Virus record (IMG/VR): IMGVR_UViG_3300020178_000002
Location: 124,001 to 188,000 of that record
DNA: 64,000 bases
Strand: one strand, 5' to 3'
Numbering within the stretch: the first letter of the stretch is position 1; each line of letters begins with the position of its first letter. Below are positions 9,101 through 37,332 of the stretch, one piece after another. A program made the position numbers and the translations under genes. Under the pieces are notes generated by a model. That model saw nothing but the letters and a program-made list of their open reading frames with translations. It did no database searches and was not told the origin of the DNA.

Positions 9101-9208
9101 ACCCTTTAATAAACCATCCTTATATGAATTGTCTAAACTCCTTAAAGCCAGAGAAGTTGAAGGACTATTGTCGTCACCACTGCGTACATCTAATATGATC
9201 TTGCTCAT
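185..9208 (-). CDS. Very large (3007 aa) putative virion structural protein (baseplate/tail-associated)
   Basis: 9 kb uninterrupted ORF, rich in G/S/D/V/L, with repeated beta-type segments (e.g. LIEGEDYRV, FTEGVDYDI, LSEGKDYKID); phage context. No enzyme motif recognised. Confidence 0.55.
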   Translation of the reverse strand: MSKIILDVRSGDDNSPSTSLALRSLDNSYKDGLLKGREDYFIGGDLGDILYISAGDGEIGVESRDISFTYLYAVGEKHYYGTGLRDGLVSEVFDDLGSSLRLLYRGTVVESDRSDLDVGLGLVGLGFWWTRNDIERSRYYWSGSSWSLLMGTEGESIGVVGDDLGVVGLEGRLILGGESYEIGGLEIPLISDGGEIPEGVEGVVYTPSGELGVVGHLGEEVIYLRQEGLEEKGSLVSRGSYLSPCPSVIETPLLRDGDRGYMEVIRVLDFSEEIERGVVELLEDGRISYGAIESEGLSYDGLVLGHSGLDLVGYDLGQVVGSVDIPLDFVPDGSGVEPSGVEPSGFESDGSRLVLSYSEKRYWVGIGSELLECLFVKDLPKVLDRNVGYILGSRVYLASSWSKLVSTEGHKLYGGRVGCLGGVYASQLSEKNWLVESGSFRLTNGDVCDFTRSGVVGSDGVDFIGGHILIKEGYEVSYPSTESERILLKGLGLMPGGHNGLYMNLLGSTVKGYERYDSESIGVVNDVSTQQFLNFRPRQDLGGYSDGGYYKAGENKLIEGEDYRVNSLGFDWIGSGSLRGSVREPLSTINLDYGVIEGSTSLKVKSDFGDAGFTEDTFTEGVDYDIRQGVLRLKKDLGSEVARGYSLTNLGSGLYSLLGDSSLIRAGDFISWGSFYVKVESVMGGGQFTLSSSDLVSGEGIWSCLRGYREGLVEGETPDLTRLSGEVLKSYSASDDVEVYKVYSTLRLDEVRDFKSKLLIRSGEQDCPLVVLREENVEKTPYYNYDVEDVHILSDSYRLRVDGVDYRDGVSVDNLRFITSSGRFVFQEWDGETWFESDWVTSDVILIREPRENLEDIAEVSLSGDDLSSPFASLDSFLVQTLGVSFNPTSGSISFSEPLDSGIGLEVLYTSLDGEDLIETLVFYVSGEEAVRQSDKRYTFNSEGRDVEFDLSPSIYIDSRKLRSFEYTFTGSQITFREPVSLESKVKVSYGVKSSIGGEQAVRLSGSILSSKFKIDQGTNTILTPVDLTGEIESGDLIKVGLEWFEVSSVSSSEITTTLPCRSNTEAGKLYKFIVPLLTYDSVDRQNAFISLVGCELRSKPKSPEFTIKGDFVSYFKPQTLMRVEGVLYEVLQSTLTEDGYTLITIQGFSFGHSFTSDASSLIVSYRPILEEGEKNLPVSTGVISEYPYVLIKYDHLKGYGYELSEGKDYKIDLETGLVILVGLGVSESTSYYFLHTALTSLNPIYLAGGRASYPSYEISYKASKQPSEYKGLNLETSCFVYAPDTFNIRVVDEDVYAGEVAGNLIKRVQSSNGNGAKRTLNGAVTYGSSLSFYDILAEDVVARSRVLLYDGYVSPLEDIMSTATGDVVGDRDGRFKFDLMKAGHWGGAGLEDPLTREIQPRYVLQELLYPLNSDLYPSAFDLIKVDDKTPDVSTLKSLMEDQKKLIMNEMDDYVMTSWARSLETDITLPYPHLRYGHLPQYQQSYEPSIFSRLFPTETEIQTVTVPGDLYSDRDAKTTNGSVIAFAENLSLGQITNLSSLTLKKRPSRFRVISYSAYGFPEIDLQSKGQPTFLVSAVSLDDFPYLNGLPDTARFISEGGSVPDITTGNPDFVFQGLSIGTHLSLSVGDFMQPILDVSDISRLDSVFGLDVPPKPRLAKVSKLLSGCLVVLDGNSGTLEVAGVSLSDAEIVLGDTLSENIDQDLDSEENLNVYRVGSDVGLKYNTGEIIDISLPSFEDPSFPWKEIEDQNVPKGLTALEGKASFVYNSVDPFIYPALQGLPVNDAGDYSLPYLKSLSERDVLAENQKLIPRVLLEASNNGVLESVYPDDLRDNSALIASGYLTTSEDFSVVSGDALQSPRQGDLILIKPESLGAGSSATGISELALVQGTDLLMPHFQSPTDANSFSLTNVSVELASDLDRGVTVRERLIYNNSISAWDSSITDILFAGYDNIDSILDKITTDGGTLTIKIHDYYGPDSVFQIVLTYDAGWFIKTVNNDGVEVFAQNISVTGYTANSIEITQSQIPNILTVAEEVNWPSNAAWETWLYNSVALSHFWGAVIAYRFFTRQGSERVAEMGLGNNYPIIYLDYRLDVEFGLSNSDYIDSNRLDFISDFDFNSLHSNTNEQTLLDAGGGQTSLKVTSVFEILSSGVFVKEESGGGFTLIESDINTNTKMGYDPYLFDSGLIEVIDLNRLRFKSLHNISRSDLPLSLFVGSEVQESGEILSGTGRYGKYTSVLAPFSSFRGFIREISEDLGSLENVQIGDLIYLDKGHASGTHRISSVELVDNSSTFAESLTNSSILGAVFPTITSVSYDLGVARIETDMEDLSLHFNDAGYREIVILLNDNYLVAPSSEVLGAYDQTFSTSALRLEYDSLDGSSFLVSSDPEYLDGQSLLLSSLPALLDSAGQTIAGIHKFSFDTLKTSLVSSLHIVDVEGSFDYSLQVAGGLTGTSSSLSSIYDGFIVSGLYTLRVLFGGSWSASFASILDGAGNDYGEAFITPEDIITFTVNSYRGIYLDNSFPELWRDYRGTEPVLLGDPTSQVKTFSDYTVSGTTGWVGYEEVGFVVRRLRRFSELFTRLHTTLTGFRFLYDERYGIVSQIDRVGDLIRLASVEDYFDYSGQGTNIGLFTDTVSIGDIVRCFDEEDNETLKFRVSEVDDTYLLGKVVSGSLSDLHSYFKVEVRDSLVPEIQSFEKFISHGFEEVYSSEPVDGISVDQVNELTDTNVDFNLLLNADDQELYYLIIDPQGLLPNTLDEYGQPPLGDDSQGVFGSPSPLDDNRGVYKITSFTANSISVEFYAGDDNPEDYFLPLVNGVSSNELRVTSGIENGTYTANPNSIHPFSYKIYKRKTYLNDSLAALVFFFRERTLSWADKIRQFNSIPLERQTWALYEAEDLIDKVGVNDNTHPSNDLLISTILGDGSFPFSDDMLSVPDRRLLVEDPQMLNEGHTLVTGMPSLFNSGLSIMEAREKRNRWIKVRTNTVEGTLQKLSRIDLASPDIKALEDIDE

Positions 9209-9998: not shown

Positions 9999-10571
9999 CT
10001 ATATGAGTGTTACCTTTGAAATGGGTACTATACTAGACAAACCATAGTCATCAGCCCAATAAATAAATCCCATTGCGATACCATTAGGGTTAGTCTTCTC
10101 TTGTTGAAAAGGTCTCATAATATGGCCTATTGAGTTTGGTACATCTGTATGTTGTACTAAGGCATCTTTTGTATATAGGTTTATCGAGTCTGAGTGGGTA
10201 ATAGAAACAGCATTCTTTAGCAGGTCAGCTTGACCAGGTGCTGGTATAACAGGTTTCAATGTATCAGTTTTCTGTAATTTGAGATCACCTGTTTCGAGGC
10301 ATTGTATTCTAGTGAAGTTATCTTTGATCAGAGTAACGAAGTAAGTTTTGTTAACAAAGCAAAAGGTAGAGATTTCTTTTGGAGTATTTTGGGTTCTCCA
10401 TTCTCTTAGGAATTTGTTTACTTCTCTCTCATCAATGAGTTCTTTTACTAGTTCTGGATCAATGCCCCTGAAGGGGGCATGAGATGCATCTTTATATGGT
10501 TTGTGCTCTGGTTCTGTGCCATGAATGGCTTTGTATGTATTCAGAGCTTGTTCATATAGTAGAGTTTGCAT
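9999..10571 (-). CDS. Hypothetical protein, paralog of 10552..11238 (shared ~60-aa N-terminal module)
   Basis: N-terminus LYEQALNTYKAIHGTEPEHKPYKDASHAPFRGIDPELVKELIDEREVNKFLREW is nearly identical to the neighbour's. Confidence 0.8.
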   Translation of the reverse strand: MQTLLYEQALNTYKAIHGTEPEHKPYKDASHAPFRGIDPELVKELIDEREVNKFLREWRTQNTPKEISTFCFVNKTYFVTLIKDNFTRIQCLETGDLKLQKTDTLKPVIPAPGQADLLKNAVSITHSDSINLYTKDALVQHTDVPNSIGHIMRPFQQEKTNPNGIAMGFIYWADDYGLSSIVPISKVTLI

Positions 10572-11238
10572 CAGTAGAGATTTCCCCGATAAGGCAATGT
10601 TTAGAGTGATATGAGAACCATATTTTCACTATACCGTTTTCAAAAGGCTGTTTATAATCAATGCTGTGATATTGCATAGAAAGAATCCCTTTTCCTCTAT
10701 AAAAGAGTGTTGGTTGTTCTATGTGTTTAAAATGATTTTGATGGTAGTCTTTGCAAAAGATTTCCATAACACCTTTTTTTGGATAAAAGTATTTTTCAAC
10801 CAGATCTTTTTCTGAGGGTAGGAAGATTCGGCTTCTTAGAGAGCTTGCCTTTTCATAGCTAGTAAGCTGACCTACTGTATTAAAATCTTCGTTATAATCA
10901 GGGTCAGAGACTTTTTCATGGTAGGCTAGTAAGTCAATGGTTTTTACATGCACCTGGGATGTCTCTTGATTTGGCAAGCAAATGGAAGATGGCCGCCTTC
11001 GACTTTTAAAAGGTACAAAGTCATTGCTGGCATGGGCAAAGTCAATTTCTTGAGGTTTGTTTTCTTTCTTCCATTCTCTTAGGAACTTTTTTACTTCTCT
11101 TTCATCCACAAGTTCTTTTACTAGTTCAGGATCAATGCCCCTGAAGGGGGTATGAGAAGCATCTTTATATGGAAGATGGTCAGGTTCTGTGCCATGAATA
11201 GCTTTGTATGTGCTTAGAGCTTGGTTGTATAGGTTCAT
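10552..11238 (-). CDS. Hypothetical protein, paralog of 9999..10571
   Basis: Start moved to ATG 11238 (MNLYNQAL): TAATG overlap with the upstream stop, GGAG SD, and alignment with the paralog. Confidence 0.8.
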   Translation of the reverse strand: MNLYNQALSTYKAIHGTEPDHLPYKDASHTPFRGIDPELVKELVDEREVKKFLREWKKENKPQEIDFAHASNDFVPFKSRRRPSSICLPNQETSQVHVKTIDLLAYHEKVSDPDYNEDFNTVGQLTSYEKASSLRSRIFLPSEKDLVEKYFYPKKGVMEIFCKDYHQNHFKHIEQPTLFYRGKGILSMQYHSIDYKQPFENGIVKIWFSYHSKHCLIGEISTDANSTI

Positions 11239-11795
11239 TATTTTCTCCATTCGATAAGTATTGGTGTGCAATCAGGATGGACAATGCCCCATCCTTTATA
11301 ATGAGCCATTTGTTCACCGACTTTAATAGTTTTGCCTGTCAAGATGCATGAGATATCAGACTTACATTCATATAGTTTAAAGGAGTCCATTTTAATTTTC
11401 TTGGAAACCTTTAAGCCTTTGAATGAGAAGCCAGCCTTAACAGCTTTTTCTTCAAGAGCTGCTTTCTTAGAGCGAGTTTCTTTTCTTGATGCATTGAGTA
11501 CAATCTTTTTCTCTTTGCACATATCACTGATCATGCAGTTTGCACATTCAGAATTTTTTGGGCTATATTTTGAGAAGCATTTTGTCTCTTCTTTCATAAT
11601 GCTAATTGCAAAGTCTTTTTGGTAAAGGTATTCTTCAGCATCAATAACAGGCACAGGTGTTTCTTTTTGTAGTGTCAATTCAACCAAGTTAAAGTCTGGG
11701 TAAAAAGAATTGACTGTACAATTGACAGGTGTTGGAAGACCTTTAAATTCATCATTTAAGATCTTTGAGCTTTCAATTAGGTTTAAGATAGTCAT
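11238..11795 (-). CDS. Cys-rich putative zinc-binding protein
   Basis: CF-x8-ECANC-x5-C cluster and a C-terminal C..C..HxxC cluster; AAGGAG SD. Confidence 0.65.
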   Translation of the reverse strand: MTILNLIESSKILNDEFKGLPTPVNCTVNSFYPDFNLVELTLQKETPVPVIDAEEYLYQKDFAISIMKEETKCFSKYSPKNSECANCMISDMCKEKKIVLNASRKETRSKKAALEEKAVKAGFSFKGLKVSKKIKMDSFKLYECKSDISCILTGKTIKVGEQMAHYKGWGIVHPDCTPILIEWRK

Positions 11796-11806: not shown

Positions 11807-12982
11807 TTATAGGTCAATAGGACACTTGTTTTGATCTCCACCATTATCTTGAGTAGTCTCATCTTCCTTTGTGACTAAGAATACTTTTACAGCAGTCTCT
11901 AATACGCTTCGAGTATCCTTATCAAAACAGTGACCTGTCAGAAAGTCTAGTGTTTCTAGTGCTGCTTCATTGAATTCCATGTCATAAATTGACATGAAGT
12001 CTTCAATATGACCCAACCATGCTAGTCCTTGTCGGATTGAGCAATCTAGTGCTAGGTATTCTTCTCGAACAGCTTTTCGTAATGCTCTAGAGCATTGAAC
12101 AATAGTTTTAATATTGTCATTATGAACCTCTGGGAAGCTTGCTTGTAAGATGTTTTCTTCAAACTTAGCACTAGGGTGTGGGATATAGATAGCACTCATA
12201 CGATTGCTCATAGAGGTATCTTTTGATTGGTAATTCATACCACGACCACCATCACCATCAACACCAGAGTTTGATGTAAAGATAAAGCGAGTGCCTTTTA
12301 GGACTTTGAACATTTCACCTGTCAATGGACAAGTAAGCATTTCTTTACCTAGCTCACAGGCTTGGCGAAGTGCTTCAATTTGCTCTGAACCAGCTCTGTC
12401 ATAGTCCGAGATAAGTATAATGGCTGGGATTTGAATAATTGCGATTACTTTGTTCTCTGTTCTCTTATCTAGATGTACAGTCCACCCCTCATTTTCCATT
12501 TCAGCCACTACATCTTGGATAGCTTGTTCATCTAGCTGATCACCGCCCTCTAAAAGTAGGCTTAGATCTCGTTTGATGGTAATTCCTTGACTAGCATGTC
12601 GAAGCATACCAGAAATTTCTTCTGTTACAGTAGCTCCATTTTCCTCTTTCATAGTCATTCGGTTGATCCAACCGCTAGCATCACCATTTGTGTTAAAGTT
12701 AAACTGTGCAAATGGCAGATTCTTTCTTGCTGCAAGGTTAATAACAAACTCGTCTTTTCCTGTACCTGTCTCACCATTGATAATGAGGTGTTGCTTTTTG
12801 CTAAAAATGACAGCTTTTTGGAATGGGTTCAGTCGAGTATCATCTTCAACGTAGTTCTTTGTGGCTTTTGCCTGTTGGAAACCTGCTTTTTCAAACTCTT
12901 CTGGGAAGATTGGTGAAACAACTTGAGGAACACCAAAAAAGTTGAGTTTCTTAATAGTATTTGTTGATGCTTTGCTACGCAT
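11807..12982 (-). CDS. MoxR/CbbQ/CobS-type AAA+ ATPase
   Basis: Walker A GETGTGKD, Walker B-like ILISDYDRA, sensor FIFTSN, arginine finger SNRM, C-terminal SIRQ; next to a VWA gene. Confidence 0.85.
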   Translation of the reverse strand: MRSKASTNTIKKLNFFGVPQVVSPIFPEEFEKAGFQQAKATKNYVEDDTRLNPFQKAVIFSKKQHLIINGETGTGKDEFVINLAARKNLPFAQFNFNTNGDASGWINRMTMKEENGATVTEEISGMLRHASQGITIKRDLSLLLEGGDQLDEQAIQDVVAEMENEGWTVHLDKRTENKVIAIIQIPAIILISDYDRAGSEQIEALRQACELGKEMLTCPLTGEMFKVLKGTRFIFTSNSGVDGDGGRGMNYQSKDTSMSNRMSAIYIPHPSAKFEENILQASFPEVHNDNIKTIVQCSRALRKAVREEYLALDCSIRQGLAWLGHIEDFMSIYDMEFNEAALETLDFLTGHCFDKDTRSVLETAVKVFLVTKEDETTQDNGGDQNKCPIDL

Positions 12983-13121: not shown

Positions 13122-14339
13122 ATGAAACGTAATCCATATGAACAAAAACACCCCTATTCCAACATTCGAGGGGCTTTTTACTCGGTATTAAGCCAGATGC
13201 CTCAAGATGTGAACACATCAGTGACTCATTCGGGTCAAACGTTTGCAATAAGTGGCACTTTTAAGTGGCTAGACTTTAGTAGATTCATTACTGATTGTCA
13301 CAAAGACCATGTATATTCTACTTTAATTAACAGAAGAATCGTGAAGAAAGATGTGACTCTTTATATTGCATCAGAGTTTGTGCTAAATGTGTGTGGTCTT
13401 TCTCAAAGTGAGGCAATTGCAGCAGGCTTACATGAAGGTGGACATGCTTTATGTGATATGGCTGGTTCAGACTACCCTAGTAGACAAGAATTCGACCAAC
13501 ATATCCTGCCTTACATCACTAATGAGCCAAGAGTATATTCAAATTCAGATCTAGGTAAATGGGTTAATGTACTCGCTGATGGTCGCCTTGAAAATGGAAT
13601 CAGCTTACAGTTTCCAGATGTTGAGAGGTACTTTTATGCAATTCAAAATTGGGTACACCGATTAGAAGCAGAGAATAGAGGTCAAGAGGCATCAAGTGAC
13701 TTTATGATGGCTCTTCGAGATGCTGTCAAAGGTTGGGATAATGAATCAGCGAGAGAGGTCTGGGAAGAATACTTGCCAGAAGCAAGAGATCTTGTAGAGA
13801 AACTAAAGCCAATTTGGTCAAAGGTTCTTCCAAAGAACACTAATTGGAATGAAACAGCTCATTTGCCACTCCAAGCAGCCTTAGAGATCGTCAATGCGAT
13901 CAAAGATGAGTTTGAAAATGAAAGCAAAAACCAACAGGGTCAAGATTCTCAAGATTCTGGTGGTCAAGGTTCTGGAGATCAAGATTCTGGTGGTCAAGGT
14001 TCTGATGATCAAGATTCTGATGATCAAGGCTCTGATGATCAAGATTCTGAAAGCCAAGATTCTGAAAGCCAAGATTCTGAAAGCCAAGATTCTGATGATC
14101 AAGGTCAACAAGGTCAAGACCAACAAGGTCAACAGGGTCAAGGTTCTCAAGATTCTCAAGGTTCAAGCAAAAAAGGCACACTTGAGATGTTAGAAGACCT
14201 CCTAAATGGAGAGGGCAAAGCCTTAGACCCAAATTCAGGTATGGCTGAAAACATGAGGCAAGTAGAAGAAAAACTTGGTCACAAGATTTATGTGCCAAAC
14301 AACAAACCAATAACAGAAGAAAAAAGAAGATTAAAATGA
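13122..14339 (+). CDS. CobT-N-like / HExxH metallopeptidase-like partner of the AAA+ ATPase, with acidic linker
   Basis: LHEGGH (HExxH) and NVLADGRLE motifs typical of VWA-associated N-terminal domains; QDS/QGS low-complexity tail. Confidence 0.7.
   Translation: MKRNPYEQKHPYSNIRGAFYSVLSQMPQDVNTSVTHSGQTFAISGTFKWLDFSRFITDCHKDHVYSTLINRRIVKKDVTLYIASEFVLNVCGLSQSEAIAAGLHEGGHALCDMAGSDYPSRQEFDQHILPYITNEPRVYSNSDLGKWVNVLADGRLENGISLQFPDVERYFYAIQNWVHRLEAENRGQEASSDFMMALRDAVKGWDNESAREVWEEYLPEARDLVEKLKPIWSKVLPKNTNWNETAHLPLQAALEIVNAIKDEFENESKNQQGQDSQDSGGQGSGDQDSGGQGSDDQDSDDQGSDDQDSESQDSESQDSESQDSDDQGQQGQDQQGQQGQGSQDSQGSSKKGTLEMLEDLLNGEGKALDPNSGMAENMRQVEEKLGHKIYVPNNKPITEEKRRLK
13941..14166 (+). repeat. Coding 15-bp tandem repeats (QDSDD/QDSES/QGSDD)
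   Basis: Units such as CAAGATTCTGAAAGC x3 and CAAGATTCTGATGAT. Confidence 0.9.
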
Positions 14340-15106
14340 GCAGCAGTATTGAATTAAAGGAAGTTAAAAAGAACCTATTAAAAGGCTCAAACCAAGTAAG
14401 AAGAGCATTAGAAGATTATGCTCGTGACCACACCACATATAAAGAGGGTGTGACTTTTAACAATAATAGAATGGTGTCTGGAGTAGCCAAGTCTAAACGA
14501 GGCTTAATCGACAACAAATTGTACAACACAAGAAAAAATGTAATCAAAGTGCAAGCAGGATTTAGTTTTGCCAGCGACCATAGTTCATCACTTAATTGGC
14601 ATGGCGATTGGGGTCAGATTTGTAAGCTAATTGGAGGTCTGCATGACCTCTCTGACAAGCTAAACATCAAGTCTCAATCAGCTCTAGTTAGGTTTGATTA
14701 TGATTGGGACATAGAGGGTTGTTCATCTCGGGCTATACCTCACATGGTTAGATTATTAGACCATAATCAAAAGTGGAAAGACTCATATCTTCCTCAAATC
14801 AAGAATATCCGCCCAAAAGGTGGCACAAGCCTTATCTCCTATGCAGAAGCTGCACTTAGATTAGCTAGGGAGATCCCTGATTGTACTCACAGAGTAGCTT
14901 TTTTCCTCACAGATGGAGAGTGTTCAGAAAAGGTCTACTTAGAGAGCTTGCGTCAATCTGCAGCAGCAGAGGGCATCCATCTAGTAGGTATTGGGCTAGG
15001 TGTAAAAGGTAAGGGATTACCTAATGGCATTGATGGAAGAAGTGCCGAAGAAATCAGTTTAAAGATGTGCAAGATTTTAACAGAAGTAATAAAAGGAAAG
15101 AAATAA
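14336..15106 (+). CDS. von Willebrand factor A (VWA) domain protein, CobT-C-like
   Basis: MIDAS elements DHSSS, GGT and FLTDGE, plus HLVGIGLG; ATGA overlap with the upstream gene. Confidence 0.85.
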   Translation: MSSSIELKEVKKNLLKGSNQVRRALEDYARDHTTYKEGVTFNNNRMVSGVAKSKRGLIDNKLYNTRKNVIKVQAGFSFASDHSSSLNWHGDWGQICKLIGGLHDLSDKLNIKSQSALVRFDYDWDIEGCSSRAIPHMVRLLDHNQKWKDSYLPQIKNIRPKGGTSLISYAEAALRLAREIPDCTHRVAFFLTDGECSEKVYLESLRQSAAAEGIHLVGIGLGVKGKGLPNGIDGRSAEEISLKMCKILTEVIKGKK

Positions 15107-17496: not shown

Positions 17497-17534
17497 ATGC
17501 CCCTTTGAGCCGATGGCTCTGGGGGCATTTTTTT
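17497..17534 (+). terminator. Intrinsic terminator
   Basis: ATGCCCCT..GAGCC-GAT-GGCTC.GGGGGCAT followed by a T run. Confidence 0.8.
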
Positions 17535-17550
17535 ATAGAGAGGATTTATT

Positions 17551-17904
17551 ATGAAAGATAGAGAGTACACAGAGATTGTTAATGGCAAGAGAGTAGCTCA
17601 CCAAGAATTGATTTTATATTATTATCGTGAAGATCGCAAAGTGGTCATAAGCAAAGTGCTTAAAGAGTTGAATTTCGTAGAGGTTGAGGGCTTAGTATCT
17701 AATGATGTGTATTTCATTAACTCTAAGGACTGTGATCTTAGAGTTAAATGGACATTTCCTACTCAACTAGAAATTGGATTTTGTAGTATTGAGAAGGAAG
17801 TTTGGTTTGATGATGAAGAAGATTCTTATAGAGACTTCAAATTTGTGAAAAGGTTTATTGAGGCAGTTAGGCAATGTTGGGAGGGTGTAGAAGATGTTGG
17901 GTGA
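17551..17904 (+). CDS. YTExVNGKR...IRxxW family small protein
   Basis: YTEIVNGKRV, VLKELNF, VRQCW. Confidence 0.8.
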   Translation: MKDREYTEIVNGKRVAHQELILYYYREDRKVVISKVLKELNFVEVEGLVSNDVYFINSKDCDLRVKWTFPTQLEIGFCSIEKEVWFDDEEDSYRDFKFVKRFIEAVRQCWEGVEDVG

Positions 17905-18035
17905 TTATACGGAAGTAGTTAATGGTAAGAGAGTCCCTTTAAAGCATTTAAAGGGTGAGATACCATCGTATGTATCTTTATGACATAGTGAGTTGTATCC
18001 TTAGAGACATAAGAGCAGCTTGGGAAAAGGGTTAG
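17894..18035 (+). pseudogene. Internally deleted, frameshifted member of the YTExVNGKR...IRxxW family
   Basis: ATG 17894 gives MLGDYTEVVNGKRVPL... with a stop at 17983; the +1 frame reads ...ILRDIRAAWEKG-stop 18035. Confidence 0.7.
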
Positions 18036-18143
18036 TCTCTCAGGAGGGGGGGGTCTTATATATGAGCGTTTTTGGAAAAGCGGTGTTGAAGAAGTGGTCT
18101 CATATATTATTTGGGTTTGTGGATTTTGGGTTTGATTTTGAAA

Positions 18144-18196
18144 GGGGGTTTTAGATTTTTCTAAGCCCCCTTTTTTGTTTTGATAATAAGGGTAAA
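18144..18196 (+). promoter_or_regulatory. Terminator-like hairpin fused to the CCCC-N8/9-TTTGATAA promoter motif (copy 1)
   Basis: GGGGG..TTAG/CTAA.CCCCC hairpin plus T run; 18167-18196 is identical to 18982-19011 (30 bp). Confidence 0.65.
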
Positions 18197-18214
18197 CATA
18201 AGAAAGGATTTAAG

Positions 18215-18613
18215 ATGGTATTTATTTACAGCAACAATTTCGGACATCTTGCACATAAGAGATTTTTTGATGTCTTGGAAGTGAATGGGGGAGAGGTATT
18301 AGCAAAGCTTGACAGTGGTGAGGATTTGCTAGTTTGCTTTGATGGTTTCTTAACAGAATTAGCAAATGGTCATGTGGTTTATGATGTGGGAGTATTTGAC
18401 CCAGAGAAGAGTTATGAGGATCTGGACAAGTACTATGGTTTGATAGTGGGGGATGTCTTACATATCAGCAAGTCATTCTCTGAGATAGAGAATAAGGCTT
18501 TTGATATGGGAGAGGGTCTTAACTTGGACAAGGCTGGTTCAGAGTTGGACAAGATAGAGGATTTGGAATCAGAATTGAAGTTGAAGAAAGAGAGGCTTGG
18601 TTATGTTAGGTGA
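18215..18613 (+). CDS. Hypothetical protein
   Basis: 132-aa ORF with AAAGGA SD, downstream of the promoter motif. Confidence 0.75.
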   Translation: MVFIYSNNFGHLAHKRFFDVLEVNGGEVLAKLDSGEDLLVCFDGFLTELANGHVVYDVGVFDPEKSYEDLDKYYGLIVGDVLHISKSFSEIENKAFDMGEGLNLDKAGSELDKIEDLESELKLKKERLGYVR

Positions 18614-18941
18614 TTTTACTCAAGTGGTTGATGGTAAGAGGGTAGCTCTTGAGAGTTTGAAGAATGAGTTCTTTTCAGATGATATTTTTGATCTTCAATT
18701 TACTTTATTCAAAGAGCTTAATTTTATATTTGTTGGTGAGGAGTCTGGTCTTAGTACCTACAGACATGCAGTGGACTCGTCATTAGAGATAGTTTATGAA
18801 TATGATAACACTTTTGCTTTTAAGTATAAGGATAGTTTTTTAAGGATTGAGCTTAAGAATGGTATTTGTGTTTATGATGGTGTTGAGACTTTTCTATCGA
18901 GTATAAGATCTGTTTGGGCTAAGGGAAAAGACTCACATTAA
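18603..18941 (+). CDS. YTExVNGKR...IRxxW family small protein
   Basis: ATG 18603; FTQVVDGKRV, LFKELNF, IRSVW. Confidence 0.8.
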   Translation: MLGDFTQVVDGKRVALESLKNEFFSDDIFDLQFTLFKELNFIFVGEESGLSTYRHAVDSSLEIVYEYDNTFAFKYKDSFLRIELKNGICVYDGVETFLSSIRSVWAKGKDSH

Positions 18942-18959
18942 GTTTGTGGTTTTGGGAGT

Positions 18960-19011
18960 GGGGGGGTTTAGAAAAAACTAACCCCTTTTTTGTTTTGATA
19001 ATAAGGGTAAA
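18960..19011 (+). promoter_or_regulatory. Terminator-like hairpin fused to the promoter motif (copy 2)
   Basis: GGGGTTTAG-A6-CTAACCCC plus T run plus TTTGATAATAAGGGTAAA. Confidence 0.65.
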
Positions 19012-19037
19012 TGGAACGATTAAAGGAGATTAAGATT

Positions 19038-19283
19038 ATGGATAGATTTTTAAGTTTAGTATCTTTGTTCTTTTTCCTCTTGGGTATATCTTGTTTTGGC
19101 AATTTGCCTATGCCTTACAAGGGTGGTTCAACAGGATATATTTGTGAGGGTTACGAGGGTATTCAGTTAGTAGAGATGATGACAACGAACAGTAGAAAGT
19201 TTTTTGGAGAAGACAAGGTGCTGTCTTATGCCTATATATATAAGACATGTGAGATAGTGGAGTTACCGACAAATGGGAATTAA
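19038..19283 (+). CDS. Putative small lipoprotein
   Basis: Start moved to ATG 19038 (AAGGAG SD); hydrophobic signal ending LGISC (lipobox-like). Confidence 0.6.
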   Translation: MDRFLSLVSLFFFLLGISCFGNLPMPYKGGSTGYICEGYEGIQLVEMMTTNSRKFFGEDKVLSYAYIYKTCEIVELPTNGN

Positions 19284-19452
19284 GATAATTTACACAGTAT
19301 TAGCTTTTGTATTTGGTTACTTGGCATTGGGTTTCTTTTTAGAGAGGTCAATAAATAAGAATGGTTTTTGGAGTATGGCGAACTTGAAGTTGATCTTTTA
19401 TTTCAATGTTGTATTTGCTGGTTTGTTTTACTACTTGAGGTATTGGCTATGA
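19273..19452 (+). CDS. 59-aa two-helix membrane protein (not in the ORF track)
   Basis: Manual translation MGIKIIYTVLAFVFGYLALGFFLERSINKNGFWSMANLKLIFYFNVVFAGLFYYLRYWL; fills the gap, GGAG SD, ATGA overlap with the next gene. Confidence 0.65.
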   Translation: MGIKIIYTVLAFVFGYLALGFFLERSINKNGFWSMANLKLIFYFNVVFAGLFYYLRYWL

Positions 19453-19799
19453 GATACACAAAGGTAGAGAATGGCCAGAGGGTTTGGTCTTCAGATTCCG
19501 CAGCTATGACTTTATATCAAGATGCACGAATGGATGCAGGTGGTTTAGGTTCAAGTTATTTTAATGTTATGCTTAAACATGCTTTATTGGAGTGTGGTTT
19601 TAAAGAGCTTGCGGAGAATACTCTGATATATGTGCTTGGTGATCCTCCATTGGGTTCACCTCTTCTTGGAGGTCGTGTGCAGATAATGACTTACAATAAT
19701 TTGTATAGGAAGAAGATATCTGTAGCGAGTGAAAAAGGTTTGGAAGAGGTTAAGGACATATTGCAGTTATTTGATTTAATAAGGAGTCATTGGAAATGA
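19449..19799 (+). CDS. YTExVNGKR...IRxxW family small protein
   Basis: Start moved to ATG 19449 (GAGGT SD); YTKVENGQRVW, ALLECGF, IRSHWK. Confidence 0.8.
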   Translation: MRYTKVENGQRVWSSDSAAMTLYQDARMDAGGLGSSYFNVMLKHALLECGFKELAENTLIYVLGDPPLGSPLLGGRVQIMTYNNLYRKKISVASEKGLEEVKDILQLFDLIRSHWK

Positions 19800-20116
19800 G
19801 TTTAACAGAGGTAGTTAATGGTAAGAGGGATTGGGCTGAAGTGTTTTTGCCAGCATATCTAAACAGGACACTTATGGCATCTAATTTGGATATGCATATG
19901 ATAGGTGAGGTTTTAGAGGAGTGTGGCTTCTCGAAAGAGTATGGCAAAGAGCTTTGGTTTCTGGGAGAGCCTTTTTGTGATCATATGAGGGGTCAGATAG
20001 AAATACTCTCATCTGGTCAGGGTCAGGGGATTTCTATAAGGTCATCAGAGCACATGGAAACGATCACAGATTTTAATTTATTTTTTGAGAAGATTAGGGA
20101 ACATTGGGAGTTATGA
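19796..20116 (+). CDS. YTExVNGKR...IRxxW family small protein
   Basis: ATG 19796 (ATGA overlap); LTEVVNGKRDW, VLEECGF, IREHW. Confidence 0.8.
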   Translation: MSLTEVVNGKRDWAEVFLPAYLNRTLMASNLDMHMIGEVLEECGFSKEYGKELWFLGEPFCDHMRGQIEILSSGQGQGISIRSSEHMETITDFNLFFEKIREHWEL

Positions 20117-20454
20117 GTTTAACAGAGGTAGTTAATGGCAAGAGGGATTGGACAGATCTTAATTCAGTGGCAGGTAGGTATAAGGCTGCTCTTGAGTATG
20201 TTGATGCCACTAGTGATTTTAATGAAATACTTAAAGGAGCTTTGCTTGAGTGTGGTTTTAAGGAGGCAGAGAACAGGTATGTTTACAAACTTGGAGAGCC
20301 TATTAGTGAGGATCATGGTCATGCTCGAGTTATGGTTTATACTTATATGAGTTTGAAAACTTTTGGTTTTATTAAGGTGACGAGTAGAAATGGTATAGAA
20401 GAGGTTAATGATATATCAGAGTTATTTAATTTAATAAGGAGACATTGGAAATGA
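20113..20454 (+). CDS. YTExVNGKR...IRxxW family small protein
   Basis: ATG 20113 (ATGA overlap); LTEVVNGKRDW, ALLECGF, IRRHWK. Confidence 0.8.
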   Translation: MSLTEVVNGKRDWTDLNSVAGRYKAALEYVDATSDFNEILKGALLECGFKEAENRYVYKLGEPISEDHGHARVMVYTYMSLKTFGFIKVTSRNGIEEVNDISELFNLIRRHWK

Positions 20455-20828
20455 GTTTAACAGAGATTGTTAATGGTAAGAGAGATTGGACAAAAGAGGG
20501 TAAGCAGGTTATCCAGAACATTTTGAGTTGGGGCATGGACAAGGGCAACTATATGATGTTAGAGGACATTCTAACATTGGAGCTTGAGAAGACAGATTTC
20601 TCAAAAAAGGTATTGTGTGGAGATGGTAAGCGTAAGGCAATATGGGAGTCAGAGTGGGGTTGTTTGATTTACCTTGACTTGGACATGGAGACAGAGGTGG
20701 ATTCAACTTTCCATGTGAGCCTATTAAACTACAGGGGTTTTGATTCTACTAACATTCTGGATTTATGGGGTTTGATCAGACAAACTTGGGTTTGGAAGCA
20801 AAAGAACGATGCATGGGAAAACAGGTAA
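20451..20828 (+). CDS. YTExVNGKR...IRxxW family small protein
   Basis: ATG 20451 (ATGA overlap); LTEIVNGKRDW, LEKTDF, IRQTW. Confidence 0.8.
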   Translation: MSLTEIVNGKRDWTKEGKQVIQNILSWGMDKGNYMMLEDILTLELEKTDFSKKVLCGDGKRKAIWESEWGCLIYLDLDMETEVDSTFHVSLLNYRGFDSTNILDLWGLIRQTWVWKQKNDAWENR

Positions 20829-20921
20829 GCTTTTTCGATATCTTGTACCCCCCTCTTTCTTTCGATTCTTCAAAGTAATACCGATCAGGCAAGAGTTTGG
20901 TGTTTAAGTCCTTGAGTTTAG

Positions 20922-20950
20922 AAGCAGGCCATTAGGTCTGCTTTTTTTTT
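20922..20950 (+). terminator. Intrinsic terminator
   Basis: AAGCAGGCC-ATTA-GGTCTGCTT plus T run. Confidence 0.85.
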
Positions 20951-21023
20951 GTCTGGAGCTTGCCAATTTATAAGTCTGTGTGAAAGGATATAAGTATCCC
21001 ACTTTTTCAAAGGAGCATGAGTC

Positions 21024-27846: not shown

Positions 27847-28947
27847 ATGAATAAAGTATCTGCACAGCAAATCAGATCTCTTGAGGTCAGAATAGCTAGG
27901 CTTGAAAAAGAAGCTGGCTTTCAAGAGTTTATGGAAAGTGTCTCTAGTACATTTAAAAGCATAGTTAACATTCCTAAAAACATGGTGATTAGGATAATAA
28001 ATGCTTTTAAAGAAATTTTTACAACTGTAGAACTGTCATTAGAAGACGAAGAAAAAACAATTGAAAATGCACTTGGCTTTTTATTGGGTTCTCGCATCTT
28101 TAGAGCAATGGCTGGAGTCATAACAACAACAGATGATTTGCCTACGATTGTTAAATTCAATAGGAAGCAGCCTTTAAAGTCTACATTCACGGGTGGGCTT
28201 GCAGGAAAGGCTAAGGTTCAATTAAAGAACCTTATTAAGCGTTATAATGAAACAAACCAGACAAGAATGAAGTCTGCCTATCTTTCATGGTATTCAGATT
28301 TCAAGCACATCCTAAACCCAAAAATTAAAGAAGTTGAGGGTGTTGAATTTGCACTTCGAGAAATCAAGAAGGTCTCAAAGTTAGCATATAGGTTCTTGTC
28401 TTCAATCATCTCTGTATTAGGTGGTGTTGTTGCTATTAAAGGGACAGTGATCTCAACTCTGCTATTTATACTAGGTAGGATCTTTTTGCAGAAGTATGGT
28501 TTTCCAGTAGGAAGACCTAGTGAATGGACTCAAAATGAAGTTGTTTTTTCAAAGGTCACTGTTGAACCCGTAAATGCTACTATACATAGGAATGTAATAG
28601 ACGTTACCAGAGATAGATATAGTGATTATAAGAAACTTTCTCCTATACAAAAGCAGATTTTTGTTGAAAAAATACATGCTAAGGTAGAACAACACCCAAT
28701 GAAAAATTGGCAACCAGATTCAGCAGCTAACCTTCAAGATGTTAAGGATTGGATTAGATGGAAGCCTATTCAGTTTACCACAGCAATCTTGACACCTATT
28801 TTAGCACTCATTGAAACAATTATGTACAAGTGGGTGATTAAGACAGACGAATATGATGAAATGGTAAAAGAGCTAGAATCAAGAAATAAGAAAGCTTCTC
28901 AATACCCAACACTCTCTTATTTAACTCAGATTTTAGAAGGCAGGTGA
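27847..28947 (+). CDS. Leader-tagged hydrophobic paralog 1
   Basis: MNKVSAQQIRSLEVRIARLEKEAG; STFTGG; two hydrophobic segments; KKASQYP tail. Confidence 0.85.
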   Translation: MNKVSAQQIRSLEVRIARLEKEAGFQEFMESVSSTFKSIVNIPKNMVIRIINAFKEIFTTVELSLEDEEKTIENALGFLLGSRIFRAMAGVITTTDDLPTIVKFNRKQPLKSTFTGGLAGKAKVQLKNLIKRYNETNQTRMKSAYLSWYSDFKHILNPKIKEVEGVEFALREIKKVSKLAYRFLSSIISVLGGVVAIKGTVISTLLFILGRIFLQKYGFPVGRPSEWTQNEVVFSKVTVEPVNATIHRNVIDVTRDRYSDYKKLSPIQKQIFVEKIHAKVEQHPMKNWQPDSAANLQDVKDWIRWKPIQFTTAILTPILALIETIMYKWVIKTDEYDEMVKELESRNKKASQYPTLSYLTQILEGR

Positions 28948-28950
28948 GAC

Positions 28951-30051
28951 ATGAATAAGGTATCAGCACAACAAATTAGATCTCTTGAGCTTAGGATAGC
29001 TAGGCTTGAAAAAGAGGCTGGCTTTATAGATGATATGGTAGGTGTCTTTAAAAAGACACTCAACATACCTAAGAATATGTTCTTAAAGATACTTTATGCC
29101 TTCAAAGAAGTTTATGATGATGTTGTTGTATGGAACACAGAATCAGAATCTAAGGCTATGGATTCATTAGGTGCATTATTGGGCATAAGAATATTTAGAT
29201 CTTTAGCTGGTGTTATAACTACAAGTGAGGGTTTACCTAAAATTGTCAAGTTCAACTACTCTGACCCTTTAAGCTCAACCTTCACAGGTGGACTTGCAAT
29301 GAAGTCTAATATCCCTCTTAAGAAGCTTATCAATATGTATGAGGGTGAGAACCAGACCAGAATGAAGAGAGCTTACACTTCATGGTATGCAGACTATAAA
29401 GAAATCATAAACCCTTCTGTCTCTGATAGAGAAGCGATTGATATTTTCTTAGATCTTTGTAAAAGAGGTGGGAAGTGGCTCTATCGCTTAATGACTGCCC
29501 TTATAGGTTTGGTTGGTATAGCGACTCTTAAGTCCACAGTCATATTCAACATCATTATTATGGTTGTACAGAGATATGTGCAGATAGGGATGTTTGATTT
29601 TCGAAATATGGATAAGAGAATTCTGGACTTCCAAGAAACAACAGTAAAGTATATAGACATAAAATCTGTTAAGTATCTTGAAGCAGAGGGTGTTATTGAA
29701 AACACTCACAAATTCATATCTGATGTTCTGGTTGGTGGGAGAGGGTATGTTCCTCGAAAAGAAGTAAAGGAATTTACTCTCGCTATTGTTGAAAAGCCCT
29801 TGCAGAAATACCAACCTATTGATTTTGTGTCTTGGAAAAAAGTTAGAGAGTACATGACACAAAACTACACTACCTTTATTGGTGTTTTCCTAACAGGATT
29901 CTTAGCTCTACTTGAGAAAGCACTTTATAAATGGGTCTTTAAAACAGAAGACTATGAAAAGATGAAAGCTGAAAGTGATGCAATGGGCAAGACAGCTTCT
30001 AAATACCCTGCAATTGCTTATATGGCTAGAAAGCTAGAAAGCTATTTATGA
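28951..30051 (+). CDS. Leader-tagged hydrophobic paralog 2
   Basis: Same leader; STFTGG; KTASKYP tail. Confidence 0.85.
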   Translation: MNKVSAQQIRSLELRIARLEKEAGFIDDMVGVFKKTLNIPKNMFLKILYAFKEVYDDVVVWNTESESKAMDSLGALLGIRIFRSLAGVITTSEGLPKIVKFNYSDPLSSTFTGGLAMKSNIPLKKLINMYEGENQTRMKRAYTSWYADYKEIINPSVSDREAIDIFLDLCKRGGKWLYRLMTALIGLVGIATLKSTVIFNIIIMVVQRYVQIGMFDFRNMDKRILDFQETTVKYIDIKSVKYLEAEGVIENTHKFISDVLVGGRGYVPRKEVKEFTLAIVEKPLQKYQPIDFVSWKKVREYMTQNYTTFIGVFLTGFLALLEKALYKWVFKTEDYEKMKAESDAMGKTASKYPAIAYMARKLESYL

Positions 30052-30632
30052 TATACTCGCTTCAATGTACCTACTCAAATGGCATAAGAATAAACTCTTT
30101 AAATATATCACTTGCTAATGGACAGTCTTTCGATTGCCCAAAGCAAACATATGATACTAATAAAGAAATCCAAGCTCTGGTGTCCTCTGGTATGTTGAAG
30201 CTAAAAGTAAAAGAACACAAGTCTGGCCTTAGAGCGAACTCTAATAAACGAGTTTTACGAAGCAACCCGACTAATGAGAGAGTTGTAGAGAGAGTTGTAG
30301 AGAGAGTTGTTGAATCCCCAATAGACATGGATGCAATCACTAGGAATGTAGTTGAGCAAATAGGTGCTGTACTATCTCCTGAGATATTGGCTCAAGCAAT
30401 TGCAGCACAACTCCCTACTGTCCAAGCTAATTACCCACAGAAAAATGAGGGTAATAGTTCTTTTATGTCTTCTAGTGAAGACAATCTAATGTTTATCCCC
30501 TCTACTATTGTAGATAGAAATACTGTTGCTTCTAAATCCTCTGCCTCTGAAAGCATATCGGAAGACTCTGATGGTCTTGCTGATGCTATGGCTGCTTTAA
30601 AAGCAATGAAAAAGAAGAAAGGTCAAACCTAA
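30048..30632 (+). CDS. Hypothetical protein with ERVV x3 repeat
   Basis: 194 aa, overlapping both neighbours; 12-bp coding repeat GAGAGAGTTGTA. Confidence 0.75.
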   Translation: MIYSLQCTYSNGIRINSLNISLANGQSFDCPKQTYDTNKEIQALVSSGMLKLKVKEHKSGLRANSNKRVLRSNPTNERVVERVVERVVESPIDMDAITRNVVEQIGAVLSPEILAQAIAAQLPTVQANYPQKNEGNSSFMSSSEDNLMFIPSTIVDRNTVASKSSASESISEDSDGLADAMAALKAMKKKKGQT

Positions 30633-36960: not shown

Positions 36961-37332
36961 TTGAAATACACCGAAATAAAAAATGGCCTTAGAGTGCTTA
37001 CTGTGGATGCTATTGGGATAATCAATGAAGCAAAGTTCCAGGCTGAAGAAGAAAAGGCAATAGAAGTAGTTGTAGCTGCTTTAGAAGAAGCAGGGTTCAA
37101 AAAGAAAGATGAGTCCCAACCAGATCGTGTTTTGATTATGGTACATAATTCAGAAAGCTTCCCTATTGAGATTTACTTTTTCTTGCCAGCATACACAGGA
37201 GGTTTTGTTCTTCAAAGTGGCTGGGAGATTATAGGTTGGCATAATAATAGTCAAAGCATAAATGAGATGAAGAACATCTTCAGCCATATAAGATCTTGCT
37301 GGAAGCAACAGTTTAAGAAGGATTCTTTATAA
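36961..37332 (+). CDS. Dispersed member of the YTExVNGKR...IRxxW family
   Basis: YTEIKNGLRV, ALEEAGF, IRSCWK; AAGGAG SD. Confidence 0.75.
   Translation: MKYTEIKNGLRVLTVDAIGIINEAKFQAEEEKAIEVVVAALEEAGFKKKDESQPDRVLIMVHNSESFPIEIYFFLPAYTGGFVLQSGWEIIGWHNNSQSINEMKNIFSHIRSCWKQQFKKDSL

What the first reader, a model, noticed from the sequence alone, without database searches (positions are those of the whole stretch)
17551..20828. Tandem array of hypervariable ~110-125-aa genes with conserved ends, where one gene's C-terminal motif encodes the next gene's RBS
Seen: six intact genes (17551, 18603, 19449, 19796, 20113, 20451), one relic (17894) and a dispersed copy (36961) share mainly three anchors: N-terminal [YFL]T[EQK]xxNG[KQL]R, central LxExxF and C-terminal IRxxW. 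Four are chained by ATGA overlaps. The junction DNA is a repeat: 19743-19834 and 20398-20489 are ~90 bp near-copies, and 20078-20151 is a third. The codons for I-R-x (ATAAGGAG) supply the Shine-Dalgarno for the next gene. Inference: junction repeats let cassettes be gained, lost or swapped by recombination while staying translationally coupled, like an accordion of anti-defence or host-interaction variants.
Basis: partly seen in the sequence, partly recalled or inferred. Interest (0 to 1): 0.75.

Follow-up and report, generated by a model that had tools for sequence, protein, structure and literature searches.

The report
Chained small-gene family in a jumbo phage
A giant salt-marsh phage carries a row of seven related but very different small genes of unknown function, joined so that the end of each gene carries the ribosome-binding site for the next; relatives show whole genes moved or lost exactly at these joints.

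Summary
Six intact genes, one relic and one dispersed copy form a true paralog family: every member is found by a profile built from the others. The family has no Pfam, PHROG, NCBIfam, PADLOC or PDB sequence match. Its confidently modelled alpha/beta-sandwich fold matches nothing above noise.

The window is part of a 312-kb salt-marsh jumbo-phage contig. T3 to T6 are chained by ATGA overlaps. Chained members spell the motif Arg as AGG plus a purine codon, giving AAGGAG 9 nt before the next ATG. Terminal members use AGA. A distant array (about 25% identity) does the same.

- **No accordion.** Each of four relatives has one copy of each of the six array orthogroups. Paralogs are old (20-45% identity); orthologs are 44-100% identical.
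- **Junction recombination is supported.** T5 sits after T4 in two relatives and before T3 in two others, with breakpoints inside the 40-55-nt junction repeats.
- **Other supporting changes.** The 5' modules have been swapped between paralogs. One cassette is intact, a relic, or absent, depending on the relative.
- **Faster evolution.** dN/dS is higher in the array than in most flanking genes.

Function is inferred only: diversified small binders used in host takeover or counter-defence.

The parts
17497..17528 (+). GC-rich hairpin followed by a T-run (terminator-like), upstream of the first unit
   Evidence: strand folding gives -23.1 kcal/mol, z -3.5
17551..17904 (+). T1, family member, 117 aa, pI 4.8
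   Evidence: Against L003, codons 1-58 carry 1 change; codons 59-117 have pN/pS 1.41
17894..18035 (+). Relic of a T2b-type member. Both conserved ends are kept, about 190 nt of the middle is deleted, and the frame is shifted. It overlaps the T1 stop by 11 nt
   Evidence: The gene is intact and chained to T1 in L006 and L022, and wholly deleted in L003
18140..18196 (+). Stem-loop terminator plus copy 1 of the 30-nt perfect repeat (18167-18196); a PeSL-like intergenic element
   Evidence: -20 kcal/mol, z -4.4
18215..18613 (+). P8, a 132-aa acidic non-family protein. Its last 11 nt overlap the start of T2
   Evidence: In L006 it lies upstream of T1 instead
18603..18941 (+). T2 (T2a type), family member, 112 aa. 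Last gene of its unit; motif Arg codon is AGA
18960..19011 (+). Weaker stem-loop plus copy 2 of the 30-nt perfect repeat (18982-19011)
19038..19283 (+). m81: small protein with a hydrophobic N-terminal leader and two conserved Cys (the ORF is open from 19011). It has AAGGAG 9 nt before the ATG at 19038
   Evidence: It is homologous to the gene just upstream of the distant L012 array (E 5e-6)
19273..19452 (+). m59: 59-aa protein with two hydrophobic segments. It ends LRYWL and overlaps T3 by ATGA
19449..19799 (+). T3, family member, 116 aa. Its 3' end reads ATA AGG AGT CAT TGG AAA TGA
19796..20116 (+). T4, family member, 106 aa. Its 5' 39 nt are T5-like. It has a diverged patch at 19843-19910
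20113..20454 (+). T5, family member, 113 aa. This is the cassette that lies before T3 in L003 and L006
   Evidence: AF2 model pLDDT 93.5
20451..20828 (+). T6, family member, 125 aa. Last gene of the chain, with a long C-terminal tail; motif Arg codon is AGA
   Evidence: AF2 model pLDDT 85.3 with the same topology
19726..19841 (+). Junction repeat, T3 3' end plus T4 5' end
   Evidence: 84% identical to 20381-20496 over 116 nt
20078..20156 (+). Junction, T4 3' end plus T5 5' end. The 5' 44 nt are 93% identical to the T4 5' end
20381..20496 (+). Junction repeat, T5 3' end plus T6 5' end
20920..20955 (+). Terminator-like hairpin plus T-run that closes the chained unit
36961..37332 (+). T7, dispersed family member, 123 aa, TTG start, just after an RNase H-like gene. 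Motif Arg codon is AGA

Best explanation
**What it is (shown).** This is a lineage-specific multigene family of small (100-130 aa), mostly acidic, soluble alpha/beta-sandwich proteins. It belongs to a clade of marine and salt-marsh jumbo phages. The genes sit in a plastic 3.4-kb segment arranged as three short units: T1 plus relic, P8-T2, and m81-m59-T3-T4-T5-T6. Each unit is bounded by a stem-loop.

**Cassette structure (shown).** Every cassette starts with the same N-terminal beta-hairpin codons. Every cassette ends with the same C-terminal helix motif (LFxxIRxxW).

**Dual-use 3' end (shown from sequence; function inferred).** In chained cassettes the protein stops 1-2 residues after the Trp. 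The Arg is spelled AGG followed by a purine-rich codon. The 3' end therefore carries AAGGAG, a 9-nt spacer and the ATGA stop/start for whichever cassette follows.

**Recombination (inferred from comparison of relatives).** The conserved 3' end of one gene plus the conserved 5' end of the next make a 45-116-bp repeat. Homologous recombination at these repeats moves, converts or deletes whole cassettes in frame. The translationally coupled chain is not broken.

**Evolution (shown).** The family evolves by slow birth-and-death and shuffling of old, individually retained paralogs, not by rapid copy-number change.

**Function (inferred only).** Each paralog probably uses the shared scaffold to present a different surface and bind a different host or defence target. 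That would make them host-takeover or counter-defence proteins.
For: **Family and fold.**
- Paralogy is confirmed by leave-one-out profiles.
- Thirteen further members, at roughly 18-31% identity to T5, keep the same anchors.
- Two members model confidently with the same topology: hairpin, two helices, four strands, C-terminal helix.

**Ribosome-binding site in the motif.**
- The Arg codon and tail length track chaining.
- The distant L012 array puts AGGGAGG or AGAGGGG in the same I-R-x codons, 6-9 nt before the next start.
- The phage uses Shine-Dalgarno sites generally: 34 of 57 ORFs, against a 10% background. Independent genes also show AAGGAG with a 9-nt spacer, for example m81.

**Junction identity beyond protein constraint.**
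- In the 5' modules of T4, T5 and T6, 9-10 of 10-11 identical residues use the same codon. About 4 are expected from codon usage.
- In T3 against T5, the gene ends share 17 of 18 codons and the body 18 of 31.

**Recombination at junctions.**
- W and L001 have the order T3-T4-T5-T6. L003 and L006 have T5-T3-T4-T6, with all cassettes intact and chained.
- BLAST blocks overlap by 40-55 nt exactly at the junction repeats.
- The 5' end of W T4 differs at 3 of 39 nt from W T5, but at 7-8 of 39 from its own orthologs. The 5' peptide of L006 T5 equals that of L003 T4.
- T2b is intact, a relic, or absent, depending on the relative.

**Old paralogs.** There are six orthogroups, each with one copy in each of four relatives. 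Inter-group branches are long.

**Faster evolution.** dN/dS is mostly about 0.2-0.6 and up to 1.56 (T1) for array genes against L003 and L006. It is 0.01-0.3 for most flanking genes, with a few exceptions. The C-terminal half of T1 has pN/pS 1.41.

**Arrays elsewhere.** Chained arrays recur in distant relatives L012, L017 and L020.
Against: - No functional evidence of any kind exists. Fold matches (frataxin, type III secretion chaperones, toxin-immunity proteins) stay at Z 6.2 or below, within noise.
- Only one order change and one gain/loss locus were seen among four lineages, and those lineages are not independent.
- The 5' exchange rests on 39-nt segments.
- Synonymous conservation next to start codons could reflect selection on translation initiation rather than recombination.
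- The T4-to-next junction has only AGGGA at 12 nt or GGGAG at 2 nt, so the embedded site is not uniformly good.
- The m59|T3 junction is chained without a family 3' end, so coupling does not need the motif.
- Contigs from RNA libraries match the array, but this does not prove transcription.
Confidence: 0.6

Rival explanations
1. This is an ordinary old tandem paralog family. Junction similarity is only the sum of protein constraint on the two conserved ends and selection on the translation-initiation region. The few rearrangements are incidental, and the junctions have no special role as recombination modules.
For: - Paralogs are ancient, and each array orthogroup has one copy in every relative.
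- IRxxW is kept in unchained members too, so it is a protein constraint first.
- A Shine-Dalgarno site inside the upstream gene, with an ATGA overlap, is commonplace in phage operons (general knowledge).
Against: - Synonymous identity at junctions exceeds both the codon-usage expectation and the gene body.
- The 5' modules do not follow orthology.
- The transposition breakpoints coincide with the repeats.
Confidence: 0.22
2. The chained paralogs are subunits of one hetero-oligomeric assembly, for example a virion-internal or regulatory complex. Translational coupling would then serve stoichiometry.
For: - Five genes are tightly coupled by overlaps.
- All four chained orthogroups are kept in every relative.
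- The conserved ends could form a common interface (inference).
Against: - Gene order is not fixed.
- T1, T2 and T7 are encoded apart from the chain.
- dN/dS is raised and the surfaces diverge.
- There is no positive evidence for assembly.
Confidence: 0.08
3. The operon is an envelope or superinfection-exclusion (immunity-type) module. The membrane proteins m81 and m59 are the effectors, and the T proteins are cytoplasmic immunity-like or chaperone-like partners.
For: - The m81 homolog sits directly upstream of arrays in both close and distant relatives.
- Weak, noise-level fold resemblance to toxin-immunity proteins and type III secretion chaperones recurs for both models.
Against: - T1, T2 and T7 lie in units without m81 or m59.
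- Fold scores are not above background.
- L001 has lost most of m81 while keeping the chain.
Confidence: 0.1

Closest known systems
PeSL-mediated modular shuffling in hyperplastic regions of T4-type phages (PMC2839356, PMC4122927)
   Same: - Short repeats flank small non-essential genes of unknown function. Recombination between the repeats explains the insertions, deletions and swaps that separate close relatives.
- This array also holds a stem-loop plus a 30-nt perfect intergenic repeat after each T2-type gene.
   Different: - The main repeats here are coding: the 3' end of one paralog plus the 5' end of the next. They carry a ribosome-binding site and an overlapping start, not a promoter and terminator.
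- The shuffled units are members of one protein family.
- Promoter activity and mini-circles were not tested.
Genomic accordions (poxvirus K3L, cited in PMC13359090; T4 dmd-tifA amplification, PMC9391042; SegB-driven amplification, PMC13096335)
   Same: Both involve tandem copies of small host-interaction genes in a large virus, generated by recombination between repeats.
   Different: - Accordions are recent, near-identical copies whose number changes within populations.
- Here the paralogs are 20-45% identical, each orthogroup is single-copy in every relative, and no copy-number variant was seen.
Translationally coupled operons with ATGA stop/start overlaps
   Same: Four consecutive ATGA overlaps, each with a Shine-Dalgarno-like sequence inside the upstream gene.
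   Different: - The site is embedded in the most conserved motif of the family.
- Its presence depends on synonymous codon choice, which tracks whether a gene follows.
Frataxin/CyaY-like and chaperone- or immunity-like alpha-beta-alpha sandwiches
   Same: The core is one helix, an antiparallel sheet and a C-terminal helix. Top VIA matches for both models are frataxin/CyaY, at Z 5.5-6.2.
   Different: - There is no sequence match to PF01491.
- Z is below the noise mark of 7-8.
- The family adds an N-terminal hairpin and an extra helix.
- Only the general arrangement is shared.

Membership tests
Genomic accordion (recent tandem amplification) | Copies are near-identical in sequence | tested here: not met
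   Paralogs are 20-45% identical in protein. Inter-group branches are 0.6-2.8 substitutions per site.
Genomic accordion (recent tandem amplification) | Copy number varies among close relatives or within populations | tested here: not met
   Each of the six array orthogroups has one copy in W, L001, L003 and L006. L010, L011, L015 and L016 carry the same array as the window. No joints changing copy number were seen in contigs of four runs, though contigs hide rare variants.
PeSL-type modular shuffling | A repeated intergenic motif made of a stem-loop terminator plus an early promoter | tested here: inconclusive
   The stem-loops and the 30-nt perfect repeat are present at 18140-18196 and 18960-19011, and are conserved in L003 and L006. 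The sigma-70 consensus scan found no promoter there. The host promoter type is unknown.
PeSL-type modular shuffling | Differences between relatives are bounded by the repeats | tested here: met
   This holds for the coding junction repeats: the T5 transposition blocks overlap by 40-55 nt at the repeats. For the intergenic repeat, the P8-T2 unit lies between the two copies, and P8 lies elsewhere in L006.
Translationally coupled gene chain | Stop/start overlap, with a ribosome-binding site inside the upstream gene | tested here: met
   There are four ATGA overlaps, with AAGGAG 9 nt upstream at T3|T4 and T5|T6. Coupling itself cannot be tested with these tools.
Frataxin/CyaY (PF01491) | Sequence match to the family profile, or a fold match clearly above background | tested here: not met
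   No Pfam hit at E up to 1. VIA Z is 6.2 or below and Foldseek E is above 0.05.
Any described phage or defence-related family (Pfam, PHROGs, NCBIfam, PADLOC, PDB sequences) | Significant profile match | tested here: not met
   The 5.8-billion and 1.84-billion protein searches returned only unnamed proteins.
T4 internal-protein (IP) type locus | A conserved N-terminal leader that is a cleavable capsid-targeting peptide, not part of the fold | tested here: not met
   The N-terminal 13 residues are modelled as a beta-hairpin of the domain, with pLDDT 93-97. The residue after the invariant Thr is E, K or Q, so no conserved Glu cleavage site exists. Cleavage itself cannot be tested here.

The most novel reading that the evidence does not exclude
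The family is a new class of phage counter-defence or host-takeover binders, built as self-contained cassettes. Each coding 3' end is at once a structural helix, a portable ribosome-binding site and start for the next gene, and half of a recombination site. It would be a coding-sequence counterpart of PeSL regulatory cassettes. Co-infecting jumbo phages could then exchange and reorder specificities in frame without ever breaking expression.
Probability: 0.2. Interest if true: 0.7.

Novelty: new variant of a known kind. Interest (0 to 1): 0.5.

Why it matters
- **A clean natural example.** One short stretch appears to serve three roles at once: protein motif, ribosome-binding site and recombination substrate. 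This suggests how large phages could reshuffle small accessory genes without losing expression.
- **A new family to test.** The work defines an unannotated protein family with a confident fold model, about 20 distinct metagenomic relatives, and repeated array organisation. It is a concrete candidate set for host-takeover or anti-defence screens in jumbo phages.
- **A correction.** A tandem array with conserved joints need not be a rapid accordion.

Tried and rejected
**Searches with no informative result.**
- Near-identity DNA search against 50,697 phage records: no match.
- tblastn of T5 against phages: nothing meaningful.
- Pfam, PHROGs, NCBIfam and PADLOC scans, and a PDB profile search: nothing.
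- Foldseek against PDB, BFVD, AFDB clusters and Swiss-Prot; ESM Atlas; VIA-align wide. Only noise-level alpha/beta-sandwich matches came back: frataxin, Mediator Med17, type III secretion chaperones, TriTu immunity.

**Complex prediction.** Complex prediction on T3+T4+T5+T6 gave 'no answer' (score 0.00). This is evidence neither for nor against binding.

**Searches that failed or added little.**
- The search for related loci with the wide alignment failed for lack of a conserved stretch.
- The metagenome scan with T6 returned only the window's own contig and one identical copy.

**Specific hypotheses rejected or left open.**
- P8 against the 193-aa gene in the distant array: no significant similarity.
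- The 30-nt repeat as a genome-wide promoter motif: it occurs only twice, both inside the array.
- The C-terminus of m59 (LRYWL) as a remnant of the family motif: the spacing differs (R-x-W against R-x-x-W). This is left open.
- A cleavable N-terminal leader of the T4 IP type: rejected on the model and on the non-conserved Glu.
Full report
**1. What the window is.**
- The window is part of a 312,414-bp contig from a salt-marsh metagenome (Ga0181596_10000003; IMG/VR UViG_3300020178_000002).
- It encodes a 1603-aa protein ending in a tail-sheath C-terminal domain, a DNA ligase, an RNase H-like protein and a type IB topoisomerase.
- No sequenced phage is close. A conserved 456-aa protein is 47% identical to one in a 485-kb uncultured phage and only distantly similar to Bacillus phage G.
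- It is therefore a jumbo phage with an unknown host. Shine-Dalgarno cores precede 34 of 57 large ORFs, against a 10% background.

**2.
- A profile of the seven intact proteins finds only these eight loci in a six-frame scan.
- Each member is recovered by a profile built without it, with E from 4e-4 to 2.5e-20.
- Pairwise identity is 20-45%.
- In a 36-sequence alignment that includes distant metagenomic members, the invariant residues are T4, G9, R11, R109 and W112. L44, E46, F49 and I108 are nearly invariant.
- ATGA overlaps join m59|T3, T3|T4, T4|T5 and T5|T6.
- 19726-19841 and 20381-20496 are 84% identical over 116 nt. The 44-nt 5' segment is repeated four times.

**3. Anatomy.** The segment holds three units, each closed by a stem-loop with a T-run.
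- **Unit A:** T1, then a relic that overlaps the T1 stop.
- **Unit B:** P8 (132 aa, acidic, not a family member), then T2 with an 11-nt overlap.
- **Unit C:** m81 (hydrophobic leader, two Cys), m59 (two hydrophobic segments), then T3, T4, T5 and T6, all overlapping.
- A 30-nt perfect repeat follows the stem-loops after the relic and after T2, and occurs nowhere else in the window. The wider element is conserved in L003 and L006.
- The relic keeps about 75 nt of the 5' end and about 70 nt of the 3' end of a T2b-type gene. It has lost about 190 nt between them and is frameshifted.

**4. The ribosome-binding site inside the motif**.
- All 12 chained T3, T4 and T5 genes in four genomes spell the motif Arg as AGG, followed by AGT, AGA, ACT, AAG, GAA or GAG. 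They end 1-2 residues after the Trp.
- For T3 and T5 in the window this gives AAGGAG, nine bases, then ATG. The independent gene m81 uses the same site and spacing.
- The terminal genes T2, T6 and T7 use AGA followed by TCT or CAA, and carry 7-12-residue tails.
- Genome-wide, AGG is 19% and AGA 55% of Arg codons.
- In a TARA Oceans metagenome contig (L012), whose members are about 25% identical to those here, three chained genes place AGGGAGG or AGAGGGG in the same I-R-x codons, 6-9 nt before the next start.
- Exceptions: T4 offers only AGGGA at 12 nt. T1 uses a later GGGAGGG. One terminal gene (L006 T2b) has AGG.
- The motif itself is a protein constraint, since it is present in unchained members. 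Its codon spelling is what tracks chaining.

**5. Relatives.** Three syntenic contigs were fetched, L001, L003 and L006. Smaller ones were also fetched.
- A maximum-likelihood tree gives six orthogroups. Each has one member per genome, with short branches inside groups and long ones between them.
- Orders are as follows:

| Relative | Gene order |
|---|---|
| W | T1-relic-P8-T2-m81-m59-T3-T4-T5-T6 |
| L001 | as W, but most of m81 is deleted and its start is fused to m59 (m68) |
| L003 | T1-P8-T2-m81-m59-T5-T3-T4-T6-x118 |
| L006 | P8-T1-T2b-m81-m59-T5-T3-T4-T6-x100 |

- So T5, or equivalently the T3-T4 block, has moved while every cassette stayed intact and chained.
- In BLAST, the colinear blocks of W against L003 or L006 overlap by 40-55 nt exactly at the junction repeats. 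This is what recombination within the repeats would leave.
- The start codon travels with the upstream 3' end. T3 starts with ATG after m59, and with GTG after T5.
- T2b is intact and chained to T1 in L006 and L022, a relic in W and L001, and cleanly absent in L003.
- Copy number is therefore stable, but order and content are not fixed.

**6. Junction identity beyond protein constraint.**
- Among the 5' modules of T4, T5 and T6, 9-10 of 10-11 identical degenerate residues use the same codon. About 4 are expected from codon usage. Pairs involving the unchained T7 are at expectation.
- For T3 against T5, the same codon is used at 17 of 18 identical residues in the gene ends, against 18 of 31 in the body.
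- The 5' modules do not follow orthology. The W T4 module differs at 3 of 39 nt from W T5, but at 7-8 of 39 from the T4 of L003 and L006. The 5' peptide of L006 T5 equals that of L003 T4.
- These segments are short. Selection on initiation regions could contribute.

**7. Rates.**
- Against L003 and L006, array genes mostly have dN/dS of about 0.2-0.6, reaching 0.93-1.56 for T1. Most flanking genes are at 0.01-0.3, with a few exceptions.
- T1 of W and L003 differ by one change in codons 1-58. In codons 59-117 they differ by 25.8 nonsynonymous and 4.2 synonymous changes, giving pN/pS 1.41.
- T4 differs between the otherwise 97-100% identical W and L001 only in codons 14-65, with pS 0.30. This looks like an imported patch. 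A seawater run carries a diverged version of the same patch.

**8. Structure and function.**
- T5 and T6 model confidently, with pLDDT 93.5 and 85.3. Both have the same plan: N-terminal hairpin, two helices, a four-stranded antiparallel sheet and a C-terminal helix.
- No library gives a match above noise. The recurring top hits are frataxin/CyaY, type III secretion chaperones and toxin-immunity proteins, at Z 6.2 or below.
- Most members are acidic, with pI 4.6-6.
- Contigs from RNA libraries match parts of the array at 100% identity. This does not prove transcription.
- Function is therefore inferred from context only. The genes are small, soluble, fast-evolving, individually retained paralogs in a plastic region of a large phage. 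That fits diversified binders for host takeover or counter-defence.

**9. Comparison and verdict.**
- The closest described process is PeSL-mediated modular shuffling in T4-type hyperplastic regions (PMC2839356, PMC4122927). Here the repeats are coding junctions of one protein family and carry a ribosome-binding site.
- It is not a genomic accordion in the sense of PMC9391042, PMC13096335 or the poxvirus case cited in PMC13359090.
- The family is new to the libraries searched. The architecture is a new variant of known kinds.
- Interest is moderate. The anatomy and evolutionary evidence are clear, and function is unknown.

Noticed in passing
window 27847-28947, 28951-30051, 30632-31564 (+): A second tandem paralog family: three adjacent genes of 366, 366 and 310 aa, about 40% identical to one another. 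No PHROG match.
   Followed up: no
window 9999-10571 and 10552-11271 (-): Two adjacent, overlapping genes share a stretch of about 190 nt at 80-86% identity. It shows up as cross-hits in BLAST against all three relatives, so they are probably paralogs.
   Followed up: no
window 20829-20867; L003:11544-11900; L006:10762-11064: L003 and L006 carry an extra gene just after T6 (118 and 100 aa, hydrophobic N-terminus, shared C-terminal half). It is absent from the window and from L001. Loose contig ends in a seawater run suggest that variant has it too.
   Followed up: partly
L001:9798-10004 against window 19011-19452: L001 has lost most of m81. The remaining start is fused in frame to m59, giving a 68-aa product. 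The downstream chain is unchanged.
   Followed up: partly
window 185-9208 (-): A 3007-aa ORF with no Pfam match at E 0.001 or below.
   Followed up: no
window 42187-46998 (+): A 1603-aa protein with a weak DUF2460 match near the N-terminus and a tail-sheath C-terminal domain at its end. This is unusually long for a sheath protein.
   Followed up: no
window 60900-62267 (+): A eukaryotic-type DNA topoisomerase I (type IB) catalytic core, E 3.6e-17.
   Followed up: no
window 11807-12982 (-) and 14336-15106 (+): An AAA+ protein matches the phage 'porphyrin biosynthesis' (CobS-like) PHROG at E 1.2e-11. Its Pfam AAA_5 hit is sub-threshold (17.2 bits against a cut-off of 22). A 256-aa protein lies nearby whose sequence looks von Willebrand A-like by eye. 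A weak AAA_5 gene also lies in the flank of the distant family locus L021.
   Followed up: no
window 19434-19452: The membrane protein m59 ends LRYWL, with AGG in the Arg codon and an ATGA overlap. This mimics the family's 3' end, but the spacing is one residue shorter. Whether it is a remnant or convergence is unresolved.
   Followed up: partly
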